Shown: positions 7,164-63,751 of the stretch, in pieces
Layout: each line of letters opens with the position of its first letter
Numbering within the stretch: position 1 is the first letter of the stretch
Source of the DNA: Mytilus californianus
Lineage: Eukaryota
Length of the DNA: 64,000 nt
NCBI RefSeq assembly: GCF_021869535.1
Contig: NW_026262615.1
Location: 35,216,001-35,280,000 of the forward strand
Direction of reading: 5' to 3'
Translations under genes and position numbers: made by a program
The notes under the pieces: generated by a model
What the model saw: the letters and a program-made list of their open reading frames with translations, nothing else
What the model was told of the DNA's origin: nothing
Databases searched by the model: none

Positions 7164-7714
7164 TTAAATTCCAATATTATTTGTTACAGAAAGTCGATCC
7201 TTCAAAGACTCTTTAACATAACCGTCTTTTGCTGTGAAAACTTTTCCATCGACCATGCTTTTTGAACAATATCTCCTCTACATCAGCCGCTGCAGCAGCC
7301 GATGCCCCTCCTGAACGGAGACTATGCAGTCCAAATTTTTTACTATCTAAGCCTATACTCTGTAAGCTTGAAAGTAGTATTTCCCGAGCTCTCGTGTATG
7401 ACAACGGACCTGTACTTCTAAGTTTATAAGAATTAAGAGACTTACAAAAATTAACAGATCTAAAAATAAATTCATCAAAATTTGATGTAATACTAGCTAA
7501 TTTGAGATATCGTTCTATCATAGAGACAGGACAAGTTACAAGGTTAGTTCTAGAAACAACCACATCCCTCCCTTCTCTGTAAAAATCAGTTTTACTCTTC
7601 GTCAAATATAAATTTGCGTGTGTAGAATAAATCGTTAAATCGATACCTCTCAAATTAACTAGTTCTGAAAACCTTAAAAGTAAGTCTTTAAGATTACTAT
7701 TAAGATGACTATGA
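7164..7714 (-). pseudogene. Tyrosine recombinase, catalytic C-terminal half
   Basis: LLRFSEL (Arg), KSKTD, GLHSLRSGGA (HxxR), HGRWKS and, after a frameshift, AKDGYVKE (Tyr): the R-HxxR-H/W-Y set of tyrosine recombinases. Confidence 0.9.
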
Positions 7715-8740
7715 TAAAATTGAGAATGGAAATGGGGAATGTGTCAAAGAGACAACAACCCGACCATAGAACAGACAACAGCAGAAGGTCACCAACAGGT
7801 CTTCAATGCAGCGAGAAATTCCCGCATCCGGAGGCGTCCTTCAGCTGGCCCATAAACAAATATATATACTAGTTCAGTGATAATGAACGCCATACTAAAC
7901 TCCAAATTGTACACAAGAAACTAAAATTAAAAATAATACAAGACTGACAAAGGCTAGAGGCTCCTGACTTGGGACAGGCGCAAAAATGCGGCGGGGTTAA
8001 ACATGTTTATCAATGTTTATGAGATCTCAACCCTCCCCCTATACCTCTAGCCAATGTAGAAAAGTAAACGCATAACAATACGCACATTAAAATTCAGTTC
8101 AAGAGAAGTCCGAGTCTGATGTCAGAAGATGTAACCAAAGAAAATAAACAAAATGACAATAATACATAAATAACAACATACTACTAGCAGTTAACTGACA
8201 TGCCAGCTCCAGACATCAATTAAACTGATTGAAAGATTATGTCTTCATCATATGAATATCAGGCACAATCCTTCCCGTTAGGGGTTTAGTATCATACCAT
8301 CATAACATATATGAGAAGAACATAACCCGTGTCATGCCAACAACTGGTTTTTAAATAAATGTGTTTAGTGCCGATGCAAAGACCCTATAAGTGAATCAAT
8401 ATTAACGCCAAAATATGCAATCTTTAATGACCTGACAACAGTATCGTAACTATATCCCTTCTTAATAAGTCTATTTAAAGGTTTTGTTAGCTTCAGAGGT
8501 GAATACTGACATTTTTGTGCTTTATAAAGAATATTTCCATAAAAAATTGGATGTGAAATACCTGAACGTATAAGAAGTCTGCATGTTGAGCTATATTTAC
8601 GAATGATGTCCTTATACCGATGATAAAATTTAGTAAATGTTTTGACTAGTTTGTGATATCGAAAACCCTGGTGTAAGAATTTTTCAGTAATACATAAATT
8701 TCTCTCGTTAAAATCTAAAACACTGTTACATACACGAGCG
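7715..8740 (-). mobile_element. 5'-truncated Penelope-like retroelement (family A) inserted in YR, TATGA target-site duplication
   Basis: TATGA at 7710-7714 and 8741-8745. Stop-free 125-codon frame 8739-8365 (ARVCNSVLDFNERNLCITEKFLHQGFRYHKLVKTFTKFYHRY...), typical of the PLE RT C-terminus, followed by ~650 bp of 3' non-coding sequence. Confidence 0.82.
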
Positions 8741-9165
8741 TATGAACAATTTTTCGCAAAATGTCTGGTGTAATAGGATCGTTCTTAGTGATAAAATGTC
8801 CCAATTTTCTCTGTGCTCCTTCATAAACAAACGTTACTAATTCAGATGTACAAAGATTATTAAATCCAGCAAGTTTATGTGCCCAGCTAATGGCGTATAT
8901 TACTTCATTTATCTTGCTAGCCGATTTTGCATTGTGTGAAATGTGAATCAAATATAGAGAAACTGTATACTCAGATGAAGGTAATGGAGTAATATTATGT
9001 ATTTTAGTCCACTTACAGAAAGCATTAAAGGCATACTGGTACTTTTTACAAGTGTTCAGAGAACGTGAGCTCAAGCAGTACTCTGGTAATCTAGCTTTCA
9101 ATGTAGAAAGTTCATCCGAATTATCTGAATTCTGTTTCCATCTACCAAGTCGAAAAATATCTGAA
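8741..9165 (-). pseudogene. Tyrosine recombinase, N-terminal (core-binding) half
   Basis: DIFRLGRW...LPEYCLSSRSLNTCKKYQYAFNAFCKW...VSLYL...AISWAHKLAG...KNDPITPDILRKIV. Joins the C-terminal half in frame when the insertion is removed. Confidence 0.88.
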
Positions 9166-9378
9166 AAATGTGCAATGTTGAAACAAACATTATAAAATGT
9201 CAAAATATTAAAACTTCTACAAGTGAACCATGCCACTGTCAAAATAACAGGACCGTGTCCAATACTTATTTTGACCATGACAGCTACAATGCTATATACA
9301 TTAGTGCCGTGTTGAATAAAATAATGCTTTCTACAATGTATATACACACTAGGGCCTTAGCAATAACAACCGTGCCTG

Positions 9379-9507
9379 CTACAATACACATTCGTGTACT
9401 AGGGCCTCGTCACTTTAACCTCGCCAGCTACAATACACATTCGTGTAATAGGGCCTCGTCACTTTAACCTCGCCAGCTACAATACACATTAGTGCACTAG
9501 GGCCTTG
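9379..9507. repeat. 49-bp tandem repeat (~2.6 units) inside the Ngaro element
   Basis: CTACAATACACATTCGTGTACTAGGGCCTCGTCACTTTAACCTCGCCAG starts at 9379, 9428 and 9477. Confidence 0.95.
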
Positions 9508-11400
9508 TTATCCTTGTCGCATCTGATTTTACTGCCAATACTGGAGCAATAAAAGGCGCAGTGCCAAAAATGGATTTTCTATTAGAACCACTGACAAAAA
9601 TACCACTTGTATTTTTAAATTCAATAACATCAGATATGTAATCTCTGTCATTTTTATTTTTATCAAAAATGAATGACCAATAGGTCGCAGATATCCATTT
9701 TGGTACAATTAAAGTACCTCTAGCTTTATAAGCAGTTACATGTTTTATAGCTCTCAACACTAAGTAAATAGGTGGTACAATCCAATTGTTTTCACCAGAC
9801 CAATTCTGAGTAAAACAGTCTACAGCTTCTGTATTTACATTCCAGAATAAAGAGTTAAATCTTTCTTATTTTGTGTTACGAGAACTAGCAAAACGATCGA
9901 CTGTATAAGGAACCCAAAGGTCGTTAATACAAGTATAGAAAATTTCTGAAAAACCCCAGTCTTTATAATCAGTGACTTTACTGATATAATCAGCTTTCGA
10001 ATTTTCGCCTCTCGGAATCCATTGTATGTTTATGGAGATTCCTTTTGTAAACAAATAGAAAAATATGGAAATTGCTATATCTTGCAGTTTTTCTTTCATG
10101 CTTCCTGCTTGAACAATTCTGACACAATTTTGGTTATCAGTTAGCCATTTTAAGAATTTTCTAGCAAATGCATGTTGATAAGACATCAACGCAAATTCTA
10201 TGGCCTCAGTTCCCTCCACGTGGAACTCTCTAACATTTCAGTGGATTTCCACATTATGTGATAAATTTTACTTTCCAACTCTACTACTCATAGCTCTGCT
10301 GCTAGCATCAGAATATATCATTACATGCGACTGACTATATTGATTTAATGTTTTAAAATTGACATATGCAATGTTATCAAGCCAGAACTTTAATTCTGAT
10401 ATTACAAAACTTTTACTTTCTAAAACTAAATAACTATCCCATGACATTTTACTTTCAATAGACATATAGCAATATCTAGTCATTATTCTAGTAATATTTC
10501 CGATCACAGGAGACATACTTATAATTCTACCCGTTACCTGGGCTTAATGTCTGGCAGAAATATATGGAATTTCTTTGAAAACATTATGAATAAATTGTTA
10601 TAATTCGTCAATTCTTCTTTAAGGAATGCATAAAGTGAAATTACATGAATCCCAAATAATTTGCAACCACTCCAACTTCTGTACTGGAGTAAAAACTGAT
10701 TTTTCTTCGTTTAGAAGAAAACCCGCATTCAAAAGTGATTGTTTCACGAATTCAGCATCTTTTATACATTCATTATTGTCGTTATTCATACCAAATCCAT
10801 GGTCAAGATATAAAACTATTTTTATACCATTATTTCTCCAATACTTGACCAATGGTCTGAGACACTTTGTAAATATGTAAGGACCCATGGAAAGACCAAA
10901 TGCTAAAACAGTGAAACAATAAAATTCATCTTCCCACGAAAAACCCAGATACGTGTGCTGCTGTGGACATATATCCAAATGAAAATATCCAGATTTCAAA
11001 TCAAATTTATACAGATAATCATTTTTCTGAAAGTATTGCACAGCTATTTTCCAATCTTCAAATTTAATCTTTTCCGTTTTCACCGATAAATTCAAAGTGC
11101 TCAAATCTAAAATTAGACGCCTTTTCCCAGAATTTTAGGTAGCTACACTGAGCAGATTGACGATGTAAGGTTGAAATGGGACCTCAATAACGCAACCTGA
11201 AAGAACAAGTTCATTTACAGATTTGCTTACAAATTCATAATTCTTAAGAGCAGATTTGATATTTTTCATGTACATGCTCGAAGGACTATCAATAAATGGA
11301 ATAAGATAACCATTTTTCAATGTGTCTAAAATAAAAGAATTAGCACCAATATGCTCCCAGTACTGAATACCTTTTGCTAACCTTCCCTTTACACCAGAGA
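9497..11400 (-). pseudogene. Pol: reverse transcriptase, RNase H and DIRS-type methyltransferase-like domain (fragmented)
   Basis: RLILDLS, FDLKSGYFHL, LAFGLSMGPYIFTK and YLDH (for YLDD) in RT; IYSDAS, WLTDNQ and QWIPRGENSKADYISK in RNase H; VDRFASSRN, VPP and GTLIVPKW in the MT-like domain. Split over several frames. Confidence 0.92.
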
Positions 11401-11589
11401 AAATACCCGTGTTAGATTTGAAATTTTCAAAAAATCTTACTTGTCTTAGCAAAATCTCAATATCATGATTTAAACAATAATCACTATCAAAATCAGAAAA
11501 TAAATATAAATACTTATCATTAACTAACTGTTCGTTGTTAATTGTTCTGTTGTGTATTGCTGAAGTTGAACTGGTTGAGTTTGAAAAGT

Positions 11590-12323
11590 GGACAGTTCTT
11601 CCTCCAGTGACCAAATTGGTTTACAGGCATGGCACATGTCGAGCTGGGACGGCTCACGCCGCCCGCTACCAACTCAAAAGGGCGGCGGGTTCTGACGCTG
11701 ATACTGATTGTCATAATAAGGATTAGAACAGTTTTAACAGGAGCTAGTCTAGAAGTTGTCTTGTAAGGATGTGGGCGACGGGATTTATCTTTAGTCGAAC
11801 GCATGGCTCTAGACTCCGCCTGGCGGATTTTCTTTTCATCTTTAGAGTCTGAAGCGATAACATTTGCTTCATATTTACTGACAGTAGCCCAACCACCGGC
11901 TGAAGTATCTGATATGCGTATCAATTTGTTTCTGCCCTTAACCTTGTCTATGAGGTCTATTATGATACGTGAAACCTTGGTCTCGGAACGGGGAACAAAG
12001 CTATAAACCTTGTTTAACTCGGTAATAGTTTCCTCGTTAAATTTGTACTGCATTTTTCTGCCCTCGTGCTTGAATTTTAGGGAAACCTCTTCTTTTAACT
12101 TTTTGGAAATTACGTCCTGTTCACGGACCAAATCTGATTTAAGATCTACTAGCTTTTTGTCAAAATACACTGTAAAAAGTTCAAAAGTATCGGCTAAATC
12201 ACGGCGCTCTTCTACTATGTGTTTGCTAGTTTGTGATTTACCAGTTGAAATGTGTGAATATTCAGTCTCACCTTCAGACATTGGACTTCCTTCTCTTATC
12301 TCTGACATACTCAGGTTAAGCAC
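11590..12323 (-). pseudogene. Gag-like ORF1 with CCHC zinc knuckle
   Basis: RNKLIRISDTSAGGWATVSKYE...SDSKDEKKIRQAESRA. CHAC-x-QFGHWRKNC knuckle at 11592-11634, disrupted by a 1-nt frameshift. Confidence 0.85.
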
Positions 12324-52756: not shown

Positions 52757-53125
52757 TAACGTTTGGTCTTTAAATCTCTTCATCATAACTTCGTTATCGA
52801 ATATGCCTTTCAATTGGCTAATTCAAGCGCAACTGGTAAGTCTTGTGTAGATGAAAAGCGCATATTTTGCGTACTGAACTATCAGCCTTGTATCTTTGAA
52901 AAGAATTCAAAACAACTGGGTCATGCAATTGCTGGTGAACGTTTCGTTCCGATGGTAATCAGCGAAGTAGTTAGCACTCGAGTGCTGATATGAAAAATCA
53001 TTGGCTCGACCATTTTCCATAAATTTGTCGTTTATACAATTCAAAATCATTTGAAACACTCAGGATTTTTCCGAAGCATAAATGGCAAGATTTGGAACAA
53101 CATTTTGGAATTAGTGGTTATCTTA
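52757..53125 (+). mobile_element. Decayed retrozyme-like unit with eroded hammerhead (duplicated at ~56598-56965)
   Basis: CTGGTAA-GTC-TTGTGTA-GAT-GAAA-AGCGC at 52833; flanks resemble 15855-16225. Confidence 0.5.
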
Positions 53126-53620
53126 CTTCGTAAAATGAATTTACCTTTAAAAAAGTTTATTCAAGCACCATGTTTGATCCATGTGTACAACAAATGCAAG
53201 CCTGTCGTGCTTAATAACAAACCTCGTGGAACCCCACCACGTGCACATTGTGTGCCTGTACCAAGTCATGCTTTCTGTGCCGCGTGTTGTTCGTTGTTAT
53301 TTCCCTCTATTTGTCATTTCATCATTTTCATCTGCTGGAATTTAAAGAAAATGTTCAACCACGGAGTTGTTTCATTTAACTCCGTCAAGATTACAAAAAA
53401 TTATTATTATGCTTTATTATTACTGTACGATGACTCAAGTTCGTATATCTGGTAATCTTCAAAACGTCTTAGGTTTCAATGTTTTACCCTTGAAACTCGA
53501 CTGCCTTGAAGCAAATGTAATTTATTCGTTATAAATAGGTCTTGTCGAAAACATGTACATAAAAAAAAATCCATAATGAAACTTCATTATATTGAAAACG
53601 CTTTGAATTTTAAGGTAGAT

Positions 53621-56700: not shown

Positions 56701-57279
56701 CGCATATTTTGCGTACTGAACTATCAGCCTTGTATCTTTGAAAAGAATTCAAAACAACTGGGTCATGCAATTGCTGGTGAACGTTTCGTTCCGATGGTAA
56801 TCAGCGAAGTAGTAAGCACTCGAGTGCTGAAATGAGAAATCATTGGCTCGACCATTTTCCATAAATTTGTCGTTTATACAATTCAAAATCATTTGAACCA
56901 CTCTGGATTTTTCCGAAGCATAAATGGCAAGATTTGGAACAACATTTTCGAATTAGTGGTTATCTTACTTCGTAAAATGAATTTACCTTTAAAAAAGTTT
57001 ATTCAAGCACCATGTTTGATCCGTGTGTACAACAAATGCAAGCCTGTCGTGCTTAATAACAAACCTCGTGGAACCCCACCACGTGCACATTGTGTGCCTG
57101 TACCAAGTCATGCTTTCTGTGCCGTGTGTTGTTCGTTGTTATTTCCCTCTATTTGTTGGTGGTTGGCGGCCGTCTGTTGTACTGGCCAATACTTCTGTAA
57201 GCTTTTTATGTGTTAGCTAAAGATTTAATCTTGATTCAGATGGAGACCTTTGTAATTAATAAAAACATCACTGAAACGA

Positions 57280-57500: not shown

Positions 57501-60500
57501 CTCTCTATGTTGAACGAGCGTTTGAAAAAAATATGATGATATTTAGCTCGAAATATTCGGCAAATTAAATTCTTATAATTATATTTTAACTTTAAATGAA
57601 ATCAGAAATCGTCCGAGTTCTCCATAAATAATGCCATTTGGTGTTGTCTGCTTTAGATTAAATATGATCAAAATCGCAAATGTAATTTTACTAAAATATC
57701 CAGATTTTCAAAACCCAGGACCTCTGAACTGTAAGGTAATACTGGCTAAATGGCTTTATCAAACATATCTAATTACAATTCAAAAGATAAATTATGTCTT
57801 CGACATTCCTTAAATAAACTATGCATAGCTTTTGTTCCCCGATCTCTTAAATCTTTTCTAGTTGTTAAAAAAATCCACTTCTAGTAAAAAATACACCAAG
57901 ATACTGGTAGTCTTCAACTATTCAATTTCTATATTACAAATATAAAACCTTTTCTTTTTCTGAAATTCTACTTCTAGAAAATATAAGAATTTTTGTGTTT
58001 TTAATTTCAAATTTTAATTCAGTTTCCAATTTTCACAATTAATTGCAAACGTATCTAACATAAACTGTAAATCATTTCTTGATTGTGATAACACAATTGT
58101 ATCGTCAGCAGACACAAACAAAATAATTTTAAGATAAACCATTAACTCATTTTCTATATCGCAACTGATAGATTCAACCCCTGTAATTACTTTTTTTTTT
58201 AATTTAATTTTTATTTTTTTTTTTTATTATTAATTTAGTCAGAGTACTTTTTGTTAATTCTTATGTTTTCATTAATTTAGTCAAAGTACTTTTTGTTAAG
58301 TAAAATTCCCTTTCAAAACAAATTTCTATCAAACCAATTAATGCATAAGAACAATATGAAAATGTATGACCGAGTCGACTGTGGCTGACACGACTGTGAC
58401 CGAACTAGTAGTGATGCCGAAACGTCCCAAAAGCAAAAACATGAACATAGTACAATAACACCATCTGTGGGATGTATCAATACCGAGCCACGCCAACAGG
58501 ATATTACAAAAAAATGGACTAGACAGTAAAGGTTAAAAATATACAAAGATAAATAAAAAAGAAAACGTTTAATTTAGGAACCCAACTCGTACATGGAAGA
58601 GGAAGAAGAAGAATACTACCACGTAATTAAGATGATAAACAACGTAATTACAACCGATATTACAAAAGACCTGGATTCACATACGTTTCCCTTAGTCAGC
58701 AAACTTCGATGCGATAAAATGTAAATTTCCTAAGTATTGAGATGACTGTCAATGAGTTCCCGACATGCATATTGATTTGTTGCGGAGTGTGAGTAAGCAT
58801 CTTTACCCTTTGGCGTATTCATATAAAGTGATGTGATAGGATCTTTATTACGAAACAACTATCCACCAATTACTAAAGAACGAAAATAAAAACTGCAGGT
58901 CATCGTACGGCCTTCAACTATGAGGAAACCCACACCGCTATGCATAGATAGTATACTATAAAAGTGCCCATGATGACAAGATGTGAAATTATGTGTACCT
59001 TGATAAAAAAAAATGAATGCAAAATAAAAGTCAACCAAGAAAAAAAACTTTCTAACTAATACATGATATAAAGATAGAAGATACCGAACACTTTATGTTA
59101 AAACCAAAATATTCCTATCCGCGCACATAAAGTGTCCGTAGAAGGCATATGTCGCAATGTCCACCACTATCCAAAACGTATCATATTTTCTCCTATGGCA
59201 ATGCCAATTTCCCGCCCTTCAATCAATCAATCATATCACCAAGTCACCAAGTTGATTACGTAAAACCTGTTTTCAGTAACAAGGAGCCGTCTTAAATACG
59301 GTATAATTTATGATTTTTTTTTTTTTTTTTTTCTATTTAGTACTTAATTTAGTAGCATTGTACAAATGTTGACAATAATCTATAAAATCATTGAAAAAGC
59401 ATATTGATTATACATACAAGCTGTTGCCATCAAATAAAATGCGTGTAATGTAAACATTCATATACGTTCTTATTTATTTCCGATACTATTAGTTGTGTAA
59501 GTATTATATCCTTTTAAATGTTTGAATTATATATTTTCTGTGCAGTATTTTTTTTTTTTTTTACTTATTCTAATCGCCATTTTTAGTCGTACTTACTGTA
59601 TTCTTGCCTATACAAAGAAAGTCAAACGAGCATGATGTTTTGAATTGGGTCTGGCAAAATCTTATACTTCATGCATGAGTACATTCAAATTGCTGTGTAT
59701 GGTAGAAACAGGAATGCAACATAGGTGATGACACTTTGAAAATTAATAACAACTTACTTTTTAAATTCATCAAGACATTATGTTCATTGAGGATTCAAAA
59801 GGTGTGTGTGTGTGGAGGGGGGGGGGGGGGGGGGGAGGGTCCTGGTGTTGGACCCCCTTTTCCGATTTTTAGTTTTTAATTATGATAACGTTTTATGGTG
59901 TTGCGGGAGTTGGAAAACCCAATTTTCAAAATGGCTGGATCTGCGCCCGCTCTTTAAATTCATTTTGAATAGCAGGGATACAAAAGTGATTACCTTGGTG
60001 TTGTTTCCACAATAAAGCGTCAACATATTACCGTATTAAGATTTATACAATCCCCGTTAAAATTTCTTAGCTTAAAAAGTACGTGTACTTTACTTGGTAT
60101 TAATATAGTTCCACAAAGGGTTTATTTGTCCCATTATTATGTCTTAAAACACAAAATTGTGGAAGGTATAATATTTTTACCTTTCCGGCAGTTCGTTTGT
60201 CCGTCTGTCAGTCTTTTTTATACGTCCATTATCCCTCAAATATTAGGGATATGAAGAATGAATAAATGGAGATAATGGTCAACCTCGATGTGACAGCAAC
60301 CAAACAATATTACCAAAATGCATCTAGACTGAACATGCAGTATTCAACGTCTATAACATGTAAAAATGACGTCTGAAAAATATAGTTCAGCTGTTTAAAA
60401 AATGGCAATGATTGCGATCAATACTACACCTTCACACTGACAGCAGCAATCGCAGGCGAGACCCGGGGTTCAGCAGAACCCTTCATGGTTTCTAAAAAGT

Positions 60501-60610
60501 TATACCCCTTAATATATGTCTTCCCCATTAAAACTTTGAATTAATATTGTTACAAATTACCAATAACCAGTATTATAATTCGTTAAAGATTTTACTTTTA
60601 TCAATTTCAG

Positions 60611-61228
60611 GTAGAAAATGTAAAACAACTAATAGATTACAGTACAGTTTTCTTTAAACAAATTTTACAACGAATTGTTTTATAGTTTTGTTTATACTGT
60701 TCAAATGTTTTAATCATCTTTGACTTCAGGGGCGATGGATCATAACACGAGAATGAAGACAGAACTCCAAGCAATAACTCCGAGGACGTTAAGAAGTCAG
60801 AACTTACATGATATTTGTTTGTTCTCTCGTTGTATGCTGCTTGTATCCGTATCATTGAGCGTTTGGCAAGTTCTAGTAGATTTGATAAACTTACAACTTT
60901 TGGCACTGGTACAGGTGCGGTTTTTATAAGCATGCATTGTTCACTGTCTAACATCATTTTGCCTGTATGTTTTTTTATAATTTTGAATACTATTTCAACG
61001 TCATGTTTAGATAGCCTGTCCATTTTGGGACTTAAATTTGTTTAAAGAAAACTGTACTGTAATCTATAATGAGTTTCCCGGCATGCCAGGAGAAAAGTTC
61101 AAATCTGTGAATATATTGTTGTCATATTTAGTCCACACGTCAGAAGATGACCGTGAATTGTGTTACAACATAACACAGCCGACAGAGATCTTAAAAGGAG
61201 CAACGCAACTACAATACTTGAGCAGTGG
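60611..61228 (+). pseudogene. Large coding exon broken by an internal inversion (helical/ARM-like protein)
   Basis: TTTCAG| at 60610 and |GTAGAT at 61229. 60611-60666 + revcomp(60667-61033) + 61068-61228 gives 584 nt with no stop in 194 codons. Confidence 0.8.
60632..61067. repeat. Perfect 34-bp inverted repeat (60632-60665 / 61034-61067)
   Basis: ATAGATTACAGTACAGTTTTCTTTAAACAAATTT and its exact reverse complement. Confidence 0.97.
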
Positions 61229-62539
61229 GTAGATCCTTACTTTAGTGAATGAAACGAGCAGGTAATGCAGAACAAATCACAATGTATGAAGAACAAATAA
61301 AGTTAAATTGATTTTTTTCTTTTTAATTTTCAACCCTCCCTAAATTCGTACTATGGAATATTGTAACCTTCACTCTAGACGCATACTGTGTTTGGGATTT
61401 CAAATTCAAAACCATAATTGCTGTTTTCAGAACAGACTACACTAACAAGGTCAATTGTGCATGCTGACAGTCCCACAAGTAATGCCGACCTAAGATGATA
61501 TTTCTACCTCGCTTGTTTAAGAGGGTTCCCCGGAAATTTACACCACTTTATTTGTTCTTTACTCAACGTCGTTAGGTGTCTGTCAATAAGACAATTCTAA
61601 ATCGAGAATGTTTGAAATTATTGATAAGTGTACATTTCCGTATACCAGGTTCACGTGACCTTGTCTATATTTGTATATATGCGGTATTGGTTTTCCCCAT
61701 TATTAAAGGTCGTGCGGTGCCCACTAGTTATTAACTTCTCTGCATTTTTGTCTTTGTTAGAGAGTTCCCTCATTTGCAATCATACCTCATCTTCTTATTT
61801 TTATATATAAATTATTGATTTGATGTATCGCTAAAAGTAACTAAGCATTGCTTTATTTATAAATCCTAATATACATAGTGATATATACATGATTGGCCGC
61901 AAAAATACATTTTTTTGTTTGGTATCATACACTTAAGCATATTTATCGGTCATTTCTAATTGTTTAGGCGAAACTTCATTGCTTGTTCAAGGTTTTCTTT
62001 AATTTCTATTTCGTATTTCTCGTCACTAGAGAGTCCATTCACAGATTGGTGTTAACATTTTGGTAACGACTAATATTTTGTTTCAAATATAGATTTATAT
62101 TTTTAAACGTTGATATTATAAATTTATTTTCAAAGATGATGGAAGGTGCAGATATTCTTGAACTACTTTGCCGTTTGCTATACTAGAAGATGCCCGCGAA
62201 GTCACGGTACAATTGGGCAAATATTGAAACAAAGAGCACCCGACATAAAATTTTAAAGTACATTTTGTATATTACATACAGTAACTAATTATTATTACAG
62301 TGATACCAGTCTAAACTGAATAAAATCTTCAGTCCTAGACGTTTTCGGTTCAGGCAAGTTTCACTGTATATAATATTTATTATACTGAAGTAAGCTTGTA
62401 TGCTTGAGCATCCACATGTTTCTAGTAGAAAGTAACCAAAATTTACCACCCCACTTTTTTCTTGTAATGGAAAGTATACACATTATTTTACCCCTAGCTA
62501 CGCCACTGATACTCCAAACTGTCGGCTCAGGTGTAAAAT

Positions 62540-63427: not shown

Positions 63428-63751
63428 AGAACATTCGGCTCAATGAAAACGGTCTCTTCCTTTAGTAGTATAGATATAGTAGCCACGTTCGAGGAAAACA
63501 TTCAAAGAAATCAAGATGTAAACTGTATTAAATCAATGAAGCCTTATCTAAATTCAGACGACAGCGGAATTCGACTTCTCTGTTTATCAGTCCTCAGTAA
63601 TATAGCGAATGAATCTGAAATTCAGACTTTGAAAAGTGACGATGGCATGAACAAGTATTTGGTATGAGCAGTATCAATGGCACTTAAGACTGAATATGAA
63701 GTTTGGGACATTTGGTCACTACTGGGACTTGCAAAAAGTGAGAATAACTAA
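63428..63751 (+). pseudogene. ARM-repeat-like exon with nonsense codons
   Basis: After GTTTCAG(AG): ...CIKSMKPYLNSDDSGIRLLCLSVLSNIANESEIQTLKSDDGMNKYLV*AVSMALK...WSLLGLAKSENN*. Resembles ARM regions of invertebrate ARM/TIR-type proteins from memory. TGA at 63665-63667 and TAA at 63749-63751. Confidence 0.6.

What the first reader, a model, noticed from the sequence alone, without database searches (positions are those of the whole stretch)
60611..61228. Exon inactivated by a 367-bp inversion with a 34-bp inverted duplication; undoing it restores 194 open codons
Seen: a perfect 34-bp inverted repeat flanks a segment whose ORF is on the opposite strand to ORF pieces either side. Joining 60611-60666 + revcomp(60667-61033) + 61068-61228 yields VENVKQLIDYSTVFFKQILSPKMDRLSK...SSELLLGVLSSFSCYDP...KTIRC-NEFPGMPGEK...QLQYLSS(G) without a stop, between a canonical AG and GT. 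Established: inversions flanked by inverted duplications arise from staggered breaks or template switching. Inference: a very recent single-event knockout, or a polymorphic or flippable segment. The repeats now form a 34-bp-stem hairpin and a substrate for re-inversion, although flipping between the repeats alone would leave the extra 34 bp and not restore frame.
Basis: partly seen in the sequence, partly recalled or inferred. Interest (0 to 1): 0.72.

Follow-up and report, generated by a model that had tools for sequence, protein, structure and literature searches.

The report
Small inversion inside a dead mussel gene
About 400 bases of the first coding exon of a mussel gene have been flipped, with a 34-base inverted duplication, but the gene carries at least five other disabling mutations, so this is a clear example of a known mutation type in a decayed pseudogene and not a fresh knockout or a genetic switch.

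Summary

Five collinear homologues show the segment really is inverted. They are four tandem paralogues on the same chromosome and a Mytilus galloprovincialis locus. Each has the 34-nt stretch once and the middle segment in the flank orientation.

- The gene is a Mytilus-specific protein with an N-terminal domain, ARM repeats and a TDP2-like nuclease domain. It is on the + strand.
- Translation starts at the ATG now at 61023 on the minus strand.
- The conserved donor is at 61262, not 61229.
- This copy alone also has a 42-bp junction deletion, a 5-bp tandem duplication (frameshift), three nonsense codons, a 2-bp insertion and an undetectable exon. It is a decayed pseudogene, not a single-event knockout.

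The anatomy matches a "3-1-2-4" template switch. Staggered breaks with end joining is the rival mechanism.

An assembly artefact or a polymorphism could not be tested, because no reads were available. Interest is low.

The parts
60609..60610 (+). Splice acceptor AG of the first coding exon
   Evidence: The polypyrimidine tract and CAG|GTAGAAAAT are conserved in paralogues L002 and L003 and in the M. galloprovincialis locus L014 (TAG in L004). Similarity drops upstream of it.
60611..60631 (+). 5'UTR part of the exon, left of the repeat, in ancestral orientation
   Evidence: Aligns collinearly with the homologues. It lies upstream of the start codon used by annotated proteins P0001-P0003.
60632..60665 (+). 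Left arm of the perfect 34-nt inverted repeat. It keeps the ancestral junction with the upstream 5'UTR.
   Evidence: The stretch occurs once, in this orientation, in L002, L003 and L004 by fuzzy scan; in L014 only the alignment shows it, and in L006 only its 3' part aligns.
60666..60672 (.). Novel junction J1: 7 nt of uncertain origin, either filler or a remnant of the deleted segment
Evidence: These bases do not align convincingly to any homologue.
60673..61033 (-). Inverted segment. On the minus strand it holds 10 nt of 5'UTR, the start codon at 61023-61021 and about 117 codons of exon 1.
   Evidence: It matches the paralogues only in reverse orientation, at 76-81% identity. It is 62% identical to residues 1-117 of P0001 and P0002.
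61034..61067 (-). Right arm of the inverted repeat. It is contiguous with the inverted segment exactly as in the ancestral order.
   Evidence: Revcomp(61020-61067) aligns without a gap to the homologues.
61067..61068 (.). Novel junction J2. The 42 bp (14 codons) present in all five homologues between the inverted segment and 61068 are missing.
   Evidence: P0001 and P0002 also carry these 14 residues. A possible 2-4-nt microhomology is inferred from the paralogue sequence just before the AATGAG.
61068..61261 (+). Remainder of exon 1 in ancestral orientation
   Evidence: It is 55-67% identical to residues 133-179 of P0001 and P0002 and collinear with the paralogues.
61200..61209 (+). Tandem duplication of 5 bp (GCAAC twice). 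It causes a frameshift leading to TAG at 61230-61232.
   Evidence: Absent from all five homologues.
61250..61252 (+). TGA in the ancestral frame, where all five homologues have AGA
61262..61263 (+). Conserved splice donor (CAG|GTAAT), phase 0
   Evidence: Conserved in L002, L003, L006 and L014. P0001 leaves the exon-1 reading frame exactly here.
63428..63736 (+). Exon 2 (first ARM-like repeat region) of the same gene copy, carrying TGG>TGA at 63665-63667
   Evidence: It is 72% identical to residues 207-298 of P0002 with one internal stop. The paralogues and M. galloprovincialis have TGG at that position.

Best explanation
The region is the first coding exon of one copy of a tandemly duplicated, Mytilus-specific gene on the + strand. 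The encoded protein has an N-terminal helical domain, ARM repeats and a TDP2-like endonuclease/exonuclease/phosphatase domain. This copy is a decayed pseudogene.

A single rearrangement replaced the ancestral order A-X-B-D-C with A-X-[7 nt]-rc(B)-rc(X)-C. X is the 34-nt stretch, B is about 361 bp containing the start codon, and D is a 42-bp stretch that was lost.

The most likely mechanism is a replication template switch and return of the '3-1-2-4' type. The nascent strand copied A-X, jumped to the complementary strand near the end of B, and copied back through B and X. It then returned to the original template at C, probably on 2-4 nt of microhomology, and skipped D.

Shown: the inversion, the duplication, the deletion and the extra lesions. 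Inferred: the replicative mechanism, and that the inversion is one of the younger lesions. The product has no function. The 34-bp stem is a by-product.
For: - Inverted repeat and ORF geometry.
- In four paralogues on the same chromosome, the flanks match on + and the middle matches on -. In the copies whose left flank aligns (35.657 and 35.678 Mb), the two matches overlap by exactly the 34 bp.
- Alignment of the un-inverted sequence with L002, L003, L004, L006 and M. galloprovincialis L014 is collinear. X is single-copy and the 42 bp are present in all five.
- L002 and L003 have open frames of 207 and 205 aa (L002's begins at the ATG; L003's opens seven codons upstream).
- Annotated Mytilus proteins P0001-P0003 start at the same Met and are collinear.
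- Extra lesions unique to this copy.
- Branch dN/dS is 0.73 (0.43-1.4) against 0.41 (0.25-0.61), with P about 0.95.
- There is no pre-existing quasi-palindrome between X and D in any homologue (p 0.15-0.98).
- The assembly size and contig count match the PacBio HiFi/hifiasm assembly of M. californianus less 16,730 bp. HiFi data make a local mis-assembly unlikely.
Against: - No reads or second haplotype could be examined, so the reality of the two junctions rests on the assembly alone.
- The copied fragment (about 400 bp) is much longer than the tens of bp typical of published short template switches.
- The 7 nt at 60666-60672 are not explained by a clean four-point event.
- The microhomology at J2 is inferred from paralogues that are only about 80% identical.
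- The order of the inversion relative to the other lesions is only weakly constrained: P(no difference between the arms, if the inversion came first) is about 0.1.
Confidence: 0.78

Rival explanations
1. The same one-step rearrangement arose by breakage and end joining instead of replication. The left break was a pair of single-strand nicks 34 nt apart, and its overhangs were filled in, which duplicated X. The right break was resected, which lost about 42-48 bp. The fragment was then rejoined in reverse by non-homologous or microhomology-mediated end joining.
For: Inverted duplication of ancestrally unique sequence at inversion breakpoints is the signature of the staggered-break model (PMC1885836). 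The 7 unexplained nt at J1 and the short possible microhomology at J2 are typical of end joining.
Against: It needs two breaks that were processed in opposite ways, fill-in at one and resection at the other. A single switch-and-return gives both outcomes at once. The published cases are kilobase- to megabase-scale inversions. The sequence alone cannot separate the two models.
Confidence: 0.3
2. This is the reader's reading in its weaker form: the inversion was the first, inactivating hit on a working gene, and all other lesions accumulated afterwards.
For: The inversion separates the start codon and 117 codons from the rest of the gene, so it would be sufficient on its own. The order of events is not directly observable.
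Against: The two arms are identical over 34 nt, while the copy has collected five or more further disabling lesions and shows relaxed constraint. If the inversion opened the neutral phase, about 5 differences between the arms would be expected. The averaged P(0 differences) is about 0.1. Three changes specific to this copy inside X are shared by both arms, so they predate the event.
Confidence: 0.15
3. This is an assembly artefact: the animal's DNA is collinear and the assembler created the inversion.
For: No read-level evidence was available. The assembly holds no second copy of the locus.
Against: The structure has two precise junctions, a junction deletion and collinear continuation on both sides. 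It is not the full palindrome that a missed-adapter read produces. The genome statistics match a 45x HiFi/hifiasm assembly with QV 59. In PMC5453318, every candidate template-switch event that the authors inspected in human resequencing data was confirmed as reliable assembly.
Confidence: 0.05
4. This is a reversible or recombination-born inversion between pre-existing inverted repeats, that is, a flippable segment. Alternatively, it is a transposon with 34-bp terminal inverted repeats inserted in the exon.
For: Perfect 34-bp arms lie 368 nt apart, and a TA dinucleotide adjoins each arm end. The stem dominates the predicted fold.
Against: No homologue has a second, inverted copy of X or any significant complementarity to it at the site. 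The interior is the gene's own exon sequence, not foreign DNA. The arms occur nowhere else in 1.65 Gb. Flipping would leave a 34-nt insert and an immediate stop.
Confidence: 0.02

Closest known systems
Short-range template-switch mutations, four-point model, event type '3-1-2-4' or its mirror '1-3-4-2' (Loytynoja & Goldman 2017, PMC5453318)
   Same: [quoted passage not shown] No prior repeat is needed.
   Different: The copied fragment is about 400 bp, against tens of bp in the published human-chimp set. Seven nt at one junction are not accounted for. The event hit an exon of a pseudogene in a bivalve.
Inversions flanked by inverted duplications from staggered breaks (Ranz et al. 2007, PMC1885836)
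   Same: Ancestrally single-copy, non-repetitive sequence is duplicated in inverted orientation at the two ends of an inverted segment.
   Different: The scale differs: 0.4 kb here, against chromosomal inversions there. Only one breakpoint is duplicated, and the other carries a deletion.
Mytilus ARM-repeat / TDP2-like proteins, for example 'uncharacterized protein LOC134690973' of M. trossulus (P0002) and 'tyrosyl-DNA phosphodiesterase 2-like isoform X2' of M. galloprovincialis (P0005)
   Same: The window copy has recognisable counterparts of their exons in the same order: the N-terminal domain, the ARM region, the linker and the start of the Exo_endo_phos domain.
   Different: The window copy is broken by the inversion, one frameshift duplication, three stops and a 2-bp insertion. 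One exon is not detectable.

Membership tests
Template-switch event, four-point model type 3-1-2-4 | A fragment of the derived sequence is the reverse complement of adjacent ancestral sequence | tested here: met
   60673-61067 matches all paralogues only in reverse orientation, and the flanks match forward.
Template-switch event, four-point model type 3-1-2-4 | [quoted passage not shown] | tested here: met
   Point 3 is the start of X, point 1 the end of X, point 2 the end of B and point 4 the start of C. X is present twice in inverted orientation and B is inverted.
Template-switch event, four-point model type 3-1-2-4 | One event explains the whole cluster of differences | tested here: inconclusive
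   The duplication, inversion and 42-bp loss are explained. The 7 nt at 60666-60672 are not clearly explained.
Template-switch event, four-point model type 3-1-2-4 | It arises during replication within one fork | not testable with these tools
   The sequence outcome is the same as for staggered breaks with end joining.
Staggered-break inversion with inverted duplications | The duplicated sequence is unique and non-repetitive in the ancestral arrangement | tested here: met
   X is single-copy in L002, L003 and L004 by fuzzy scan (in L014 by alignment only; in L006 only its 3' part aligns) and is absent elsewhere in the genome.
Staggered-break inversion with inverted duplications | Duplications are present at the breakpoints, often at both | tested here: inconclusive
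   One breakpoint is duplicated (34 bp) and the other is deleted (42 bp).
Inversion by recombination between pre-existing inverted repeats / invertible switch | An inverted repeat is present before the inversion | tested here: not met
   No second copy of X exists in any homologue. The complementarity of X to the site is at chance level.
TIR transposon / MITE insertion | Foreign interior, multiple genomic copies and a target-site duplication | tested here: not met
   The interior is the gene's own exon. The arms are unique in 1.65 Gb. Removing the element does not restore the frame (from the sequence).
Mytilus ARM / TDP2-like gene family | Homology to the family's N-terminal domain and ARM region, in the same exon order | tested here: met
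   Identity to P0001 and P0002 is 62-72% over exons 1-2. Further exons lie downstream.
Mytilus ARM / TDP2-like gene family | Pfam Arm and Exo_endo_phos domains above threshold | tested here: inconclusive
   Arm passes in P0002 and P0005, and Exo_endo_phos passes in P0005. The window pieces on their own hit nothing. The downstream exons of the window copy are broken.
Processed or unitary pseudogene status of the window copy | Several independent frame-disrupting lesions that are absent from homologues | tested here: met
   The lesions are the 5-bp duplication, three nonsense codons, a 2-bp insertion, a missing exon and the inversion.

The most novel reading that the evidence does not exclude
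The inversion is a segregating structural polymorphism in the mussel population: the other haplotype of this very heterozygous animal would be collinear. The 34-bp perfect hairpin arms might then make the site a recurrent fragile or re-arranging spot. Alternatively, the minus-strand 128-codon ORF, which keeps the original start codon, might be expressed as a truncated N-terminal-domain protein.
Probability: 0.06. Interest if true: 0.4.

Novelty: new member of a known kind. Interest (0 to 1): 0.2.

Why it matters
This is an unusually legible natural example of a one-step 'inversion + inverted duplication + junction deletion'. The ancestral state can be read from five homologues, and the copied fragment (about 400 bp) is far longer than in the published short template-switch catalogues. 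It is useful as a teaching or benchmarking case for template-switch callers and for pseudogene annotation in Mytilus gene clusters. It has no functional consequence, because the gene copy is dead on several other counts.

Tried and rejected
- Pfam on the separate pieces and on the intact paralogue exon found no family.
- An exact-sequence look-up of the junction-spanning 128-aa minus-strand ORF in public assemblies found nothing on record.
- A word-based homologue search with the 119-aa middle piece found nothing. Its length window excludes the 298-485-aa relatives.
- The MITE reading was rejected. The arms are unique in the genome, the interior is the gene's own exon, and excision leaves a frameshift.
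- Quasi-palindrome correction of a pre-existing imperfect repeat was rejected. Complementarity between X and the deleted segment is at chance level in all homologues.
- A tRNA or SINE origin for the dispersed repeat upstream was checked. ARAGORN found no tRNA.
- The joined (un-inverted or spliced) protein was never sent to any database or fold tool. Searches used the pieces by reference. The join was only translated and aligned to the paralogues inside local scripts.
- The contig is not human. It is Mytilus.

Full report
**What is in the sequence**

The window is AT-rich (about 32% GC) and has no N. At the finding there is a perfect 34-nt inverted repeat, 60632-60665 and 61034-61067, with 368 nt between the arms. 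No match was expected in shuffles, and the own-genome DNA search found this repeat nowhere else. Between the arms the only long frame is on the minus strand: 128 codons from an ATG at 61023 to a stop inside the left arm.

At this base composition a random 130-codon frame is very unlikely, by my calculation, so the middle frame is real coding sequence.

**Is it really inverted?**

A DNA search of the window's own genome (1.65 Gb, 175 contigs; window = C35:35216001-35280000) found four paralogous copies 150-400 kb away on the same chromosome. In each, the flanks match on the + strand and the middle matches on the - strand. In the copies whose left flank aligns (35.657 and 35.678 Mb), the left-flank match and the middle match overlap by exactly the 34 bp.

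I aligned the un-inverted window sequence with these four copies and with a Mytilus galloprovincialis locus (L014, from GCA_900618805.1). The alignment is collinear from the splice acceptor to past the donor. The 34-nt stretch X occurs once (a fuzzy scan finds it once in L002, L003 and L004; in L014 only the alignment shows it, and in L006 only its 3' part aligns). Two paralogues have intact frames of 207 and 205 aa.

An annotated M. galloprovincialis protein (P0001, 298 aa, partial) begins at the same methionine. It runs collinearly through the whole exon and leaves it at the conserved CAG|GTAAT donor. The window copy is the derived, inverted state.

**What the gene is**

Relatives were found only in Mytilus: M. 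galloprovincialis, M. trossulus and M. coruscus. The full-length M. trossulus protein (P0002, 485 aa) has three parts:
- a roughly 197-aa N-terminal domain with no Pfam family, which is this exon;
- ARM repeats (PF00514, above threshold);
- the start of an Exo_endo_phos domain.

An M. galloprovincialis model named 'tyrosyl-DNA phosphodiesterase 2-like' (P0005) carries the ARM region plus a complete Exo_endo_phos domain.

In the window the gene lies on the + strand:
- acceptor AG at 60609-60610;
- exon 1 to 61261;
- donor at 61262-61263;
- exon 2 at 63428-63736;
- further exons just beyond the window end.

1. The coding sequence starts at the ATG now at 61023 on the minus strand. The stretch from the acceptor to that ATG is 5'UTR. 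Paralogues L002 and L004 have an in-frame TAA immediately before the ATG.
2. Base 60666 is not ancestral. The ancestral X-to-B junction is preserved intact, in reverse, at 61020-61067, and it aligns without a gap to the homologues. The 22 upstream codons are therefore open and in frame by accident.
3. The GT at 61229 is not the donor. The conserved donor is 33 nt further on, and the frame cannot reach it.

**Other lesions**

Compared with all five homologues, the window copy alone has the following:
- a 42-bp (14-codon) loss at the right junction;
- a tandem duplication of GCAAC (61200-61209) that shifts the frame into a TAG at 61230-61232;
- AGA>TGA at 61250-61252 in the ancestral frame;
- TGG>TGA in exon 2 at 63665-63667.

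Beyond the window, in L013, compared with the two paralogues L011 and L012:
- another TGG>TGA (L013:5978);
- a 2-bp insertion in the Exo_endo_phos exon (about L013:6987);
- no detectable counterpart of the exon encoding residues 336-392 of P0002.

A three-taxon decomposition gives the window branch a dN/dS of 0.73 (bootstrap 0.43-1.4). The two intact paralogues together give 0.41 (0.25-0.61). The window branch is higher in 95% of bootstraps.

This is a decayed pseudogene in a tandem cluster. Two other copies, L004 and L006, are also broken. 'A very recent single-event knockout' is not supported.

**When did the inversion happen?**

Three substitutions or indels specific to the window copy lie inside X and are shared by both arms, so they predate the event. 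Since the event, the arms show no difference over 68 nt in total.

If the inversion had opened the neutral phase implied by the dN/dS excess, about five differences would be expected. Averaged over bootstraps, the probability of seeing none is about 0.1. This favours the inversion being a late hit on an already dead gene, but only modestly. Gene conversion between the arms could also keep them identical.

**Mechanism**

The ancestral order was A-X-B-D-C. The present order is A-X-(7 nt)-rc(B)-rc(X)-C. Only two junctions are new: J1 at 60665/60673 and J2 at 61067/61068.

[quoted passage not shown] The sequence between points 2 and 4 is lost. The end of rc(X) and the paralogue sequence just before C share 2-4 nt, a possible microhomology for the return switch. 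This is inferred from paralogues that are only about 80% identical.

No homologue has a prior quasi-palindrome at the site, so this is not correction of an existing repeat or recombination between repeats.

The rival is the staggered-break model proposed for Drosophila inversions (PMC1885836): nicks 34 nt apart with fill-in on the left, resection on the right, then end joining. The 7 unexplained nt at J1 fit that model a little better. The combination of a duplication at one end and a deletion at the other fits a single switch-and-return a little better. I put the odds at roughly 55:30, with the rest on an artefact or other causes. The sequence alone cannot decide.

**Artefact?**

I could not see reads. 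The genome's size and contig count (1,651,950,171 bp, 175 contigs) equal the published M. californianus primary assembly (1,651,966,901 bp, 176 scaffolds) less 16,730 bp. That difference is about the size of a mussel mitochondrial genome, on my own knowledge. That assembly is 45x PacBio HiFi with hifiasm, QV 59, from an animal with 2.73% heterozygosity.

This identification is an inference from the numbers, not a tool result. If it is right, a two-junction local mis-assembly is unlikely (about 5%). An alternate-haplotype assembly and the reads also exist, and they would settle both the artefact question and the polymorphism question.

**Other readings rejected**

- A MITE: the arms are unique in the genome and the interior is the gene's own exon.
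- A flippable switch: there is no ancestral repeat, and flipping leaves a 34-nt insert and an immediate stop.
- The predicted single-strand fold is dominated by the 34-bp stem (z = -4.1), which is a trivial consequence of the duplication.

The joined or spliced protein was not sent to any search or folding tool. The pieces were searched by reference, and the join was used only in local scripts to translate it and align it to the paralogues. The contig is molluscan, not human. The blank results do not speak to the existence of a collinear allele.

**Verdict**

It is one of at least six disabling lesions in a pseudogene copy of a Mytilus-specific ARM/TDP2-like gene. It is best explained by a one-step template switch, or by staggered-break repair. 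It is a known kind of event and a tidy example, of low biological interest.

Noticed in passing
window 7213-12323, minus strand: A run of long minus-strand ORFs looks like a DIRS-like retroelement. It includes a gag-like ORF, a reverse-transcriptase-like ORF, an RNase H-like ORF and an ORF with a tyrosine-recombinase-like C-terminus. This was judged by eye from the translations only.
   Followed up: no
window 60418-60495: A segment of about 70 bp in the intron upstream of the exon matches dozens of places on many chromosomes at 80-91% identity, so it is a short dispersed repeat. ARAGORN finds no tRNA in it.
   Followed up: partly
window 53051-53455 and 56893-57216, + strand: Two ORFs 3.8 kb apart have nearly identical first ~90 residues. 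This is a local duplication or two copies of a repeat.
   Followed up: no
G000:C35 35.43-35.69 Mb (L002-L012) and window 60.6 kb onward: There is a tandem cluster of at least five copies of a Mytilus-only gene. It combines a roughly 197-aa N-terminal domain with no Pfam family, ARM repeats and a TDP2-like Exo_endo_phos domain. Two copies look intact over exons 1-2 and three are broken. More distant members lie on C68, C132 and C99.
   Followed up: partly
L012:3948-3955 (paralogue at C35:35.68 Mb): In the otherwise intact paralogue, the position of the exon-2 donor reads AT. The window copy and the other paralogue have GT there. This copy may therefore also be impaired, or it may use another donor.
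   Followed up: no
whole genome G000: The assembly size and contig count equal the published M. californianus xbMytCali1 primary assembly less 16,730 bp, about one mitochondrial genome. The species assignment is inferred from these numbers and from Mytilus-only protein hits.
   Followed up: partly
It is unrelated to this finding and I did not examine it.
   Followed up: no
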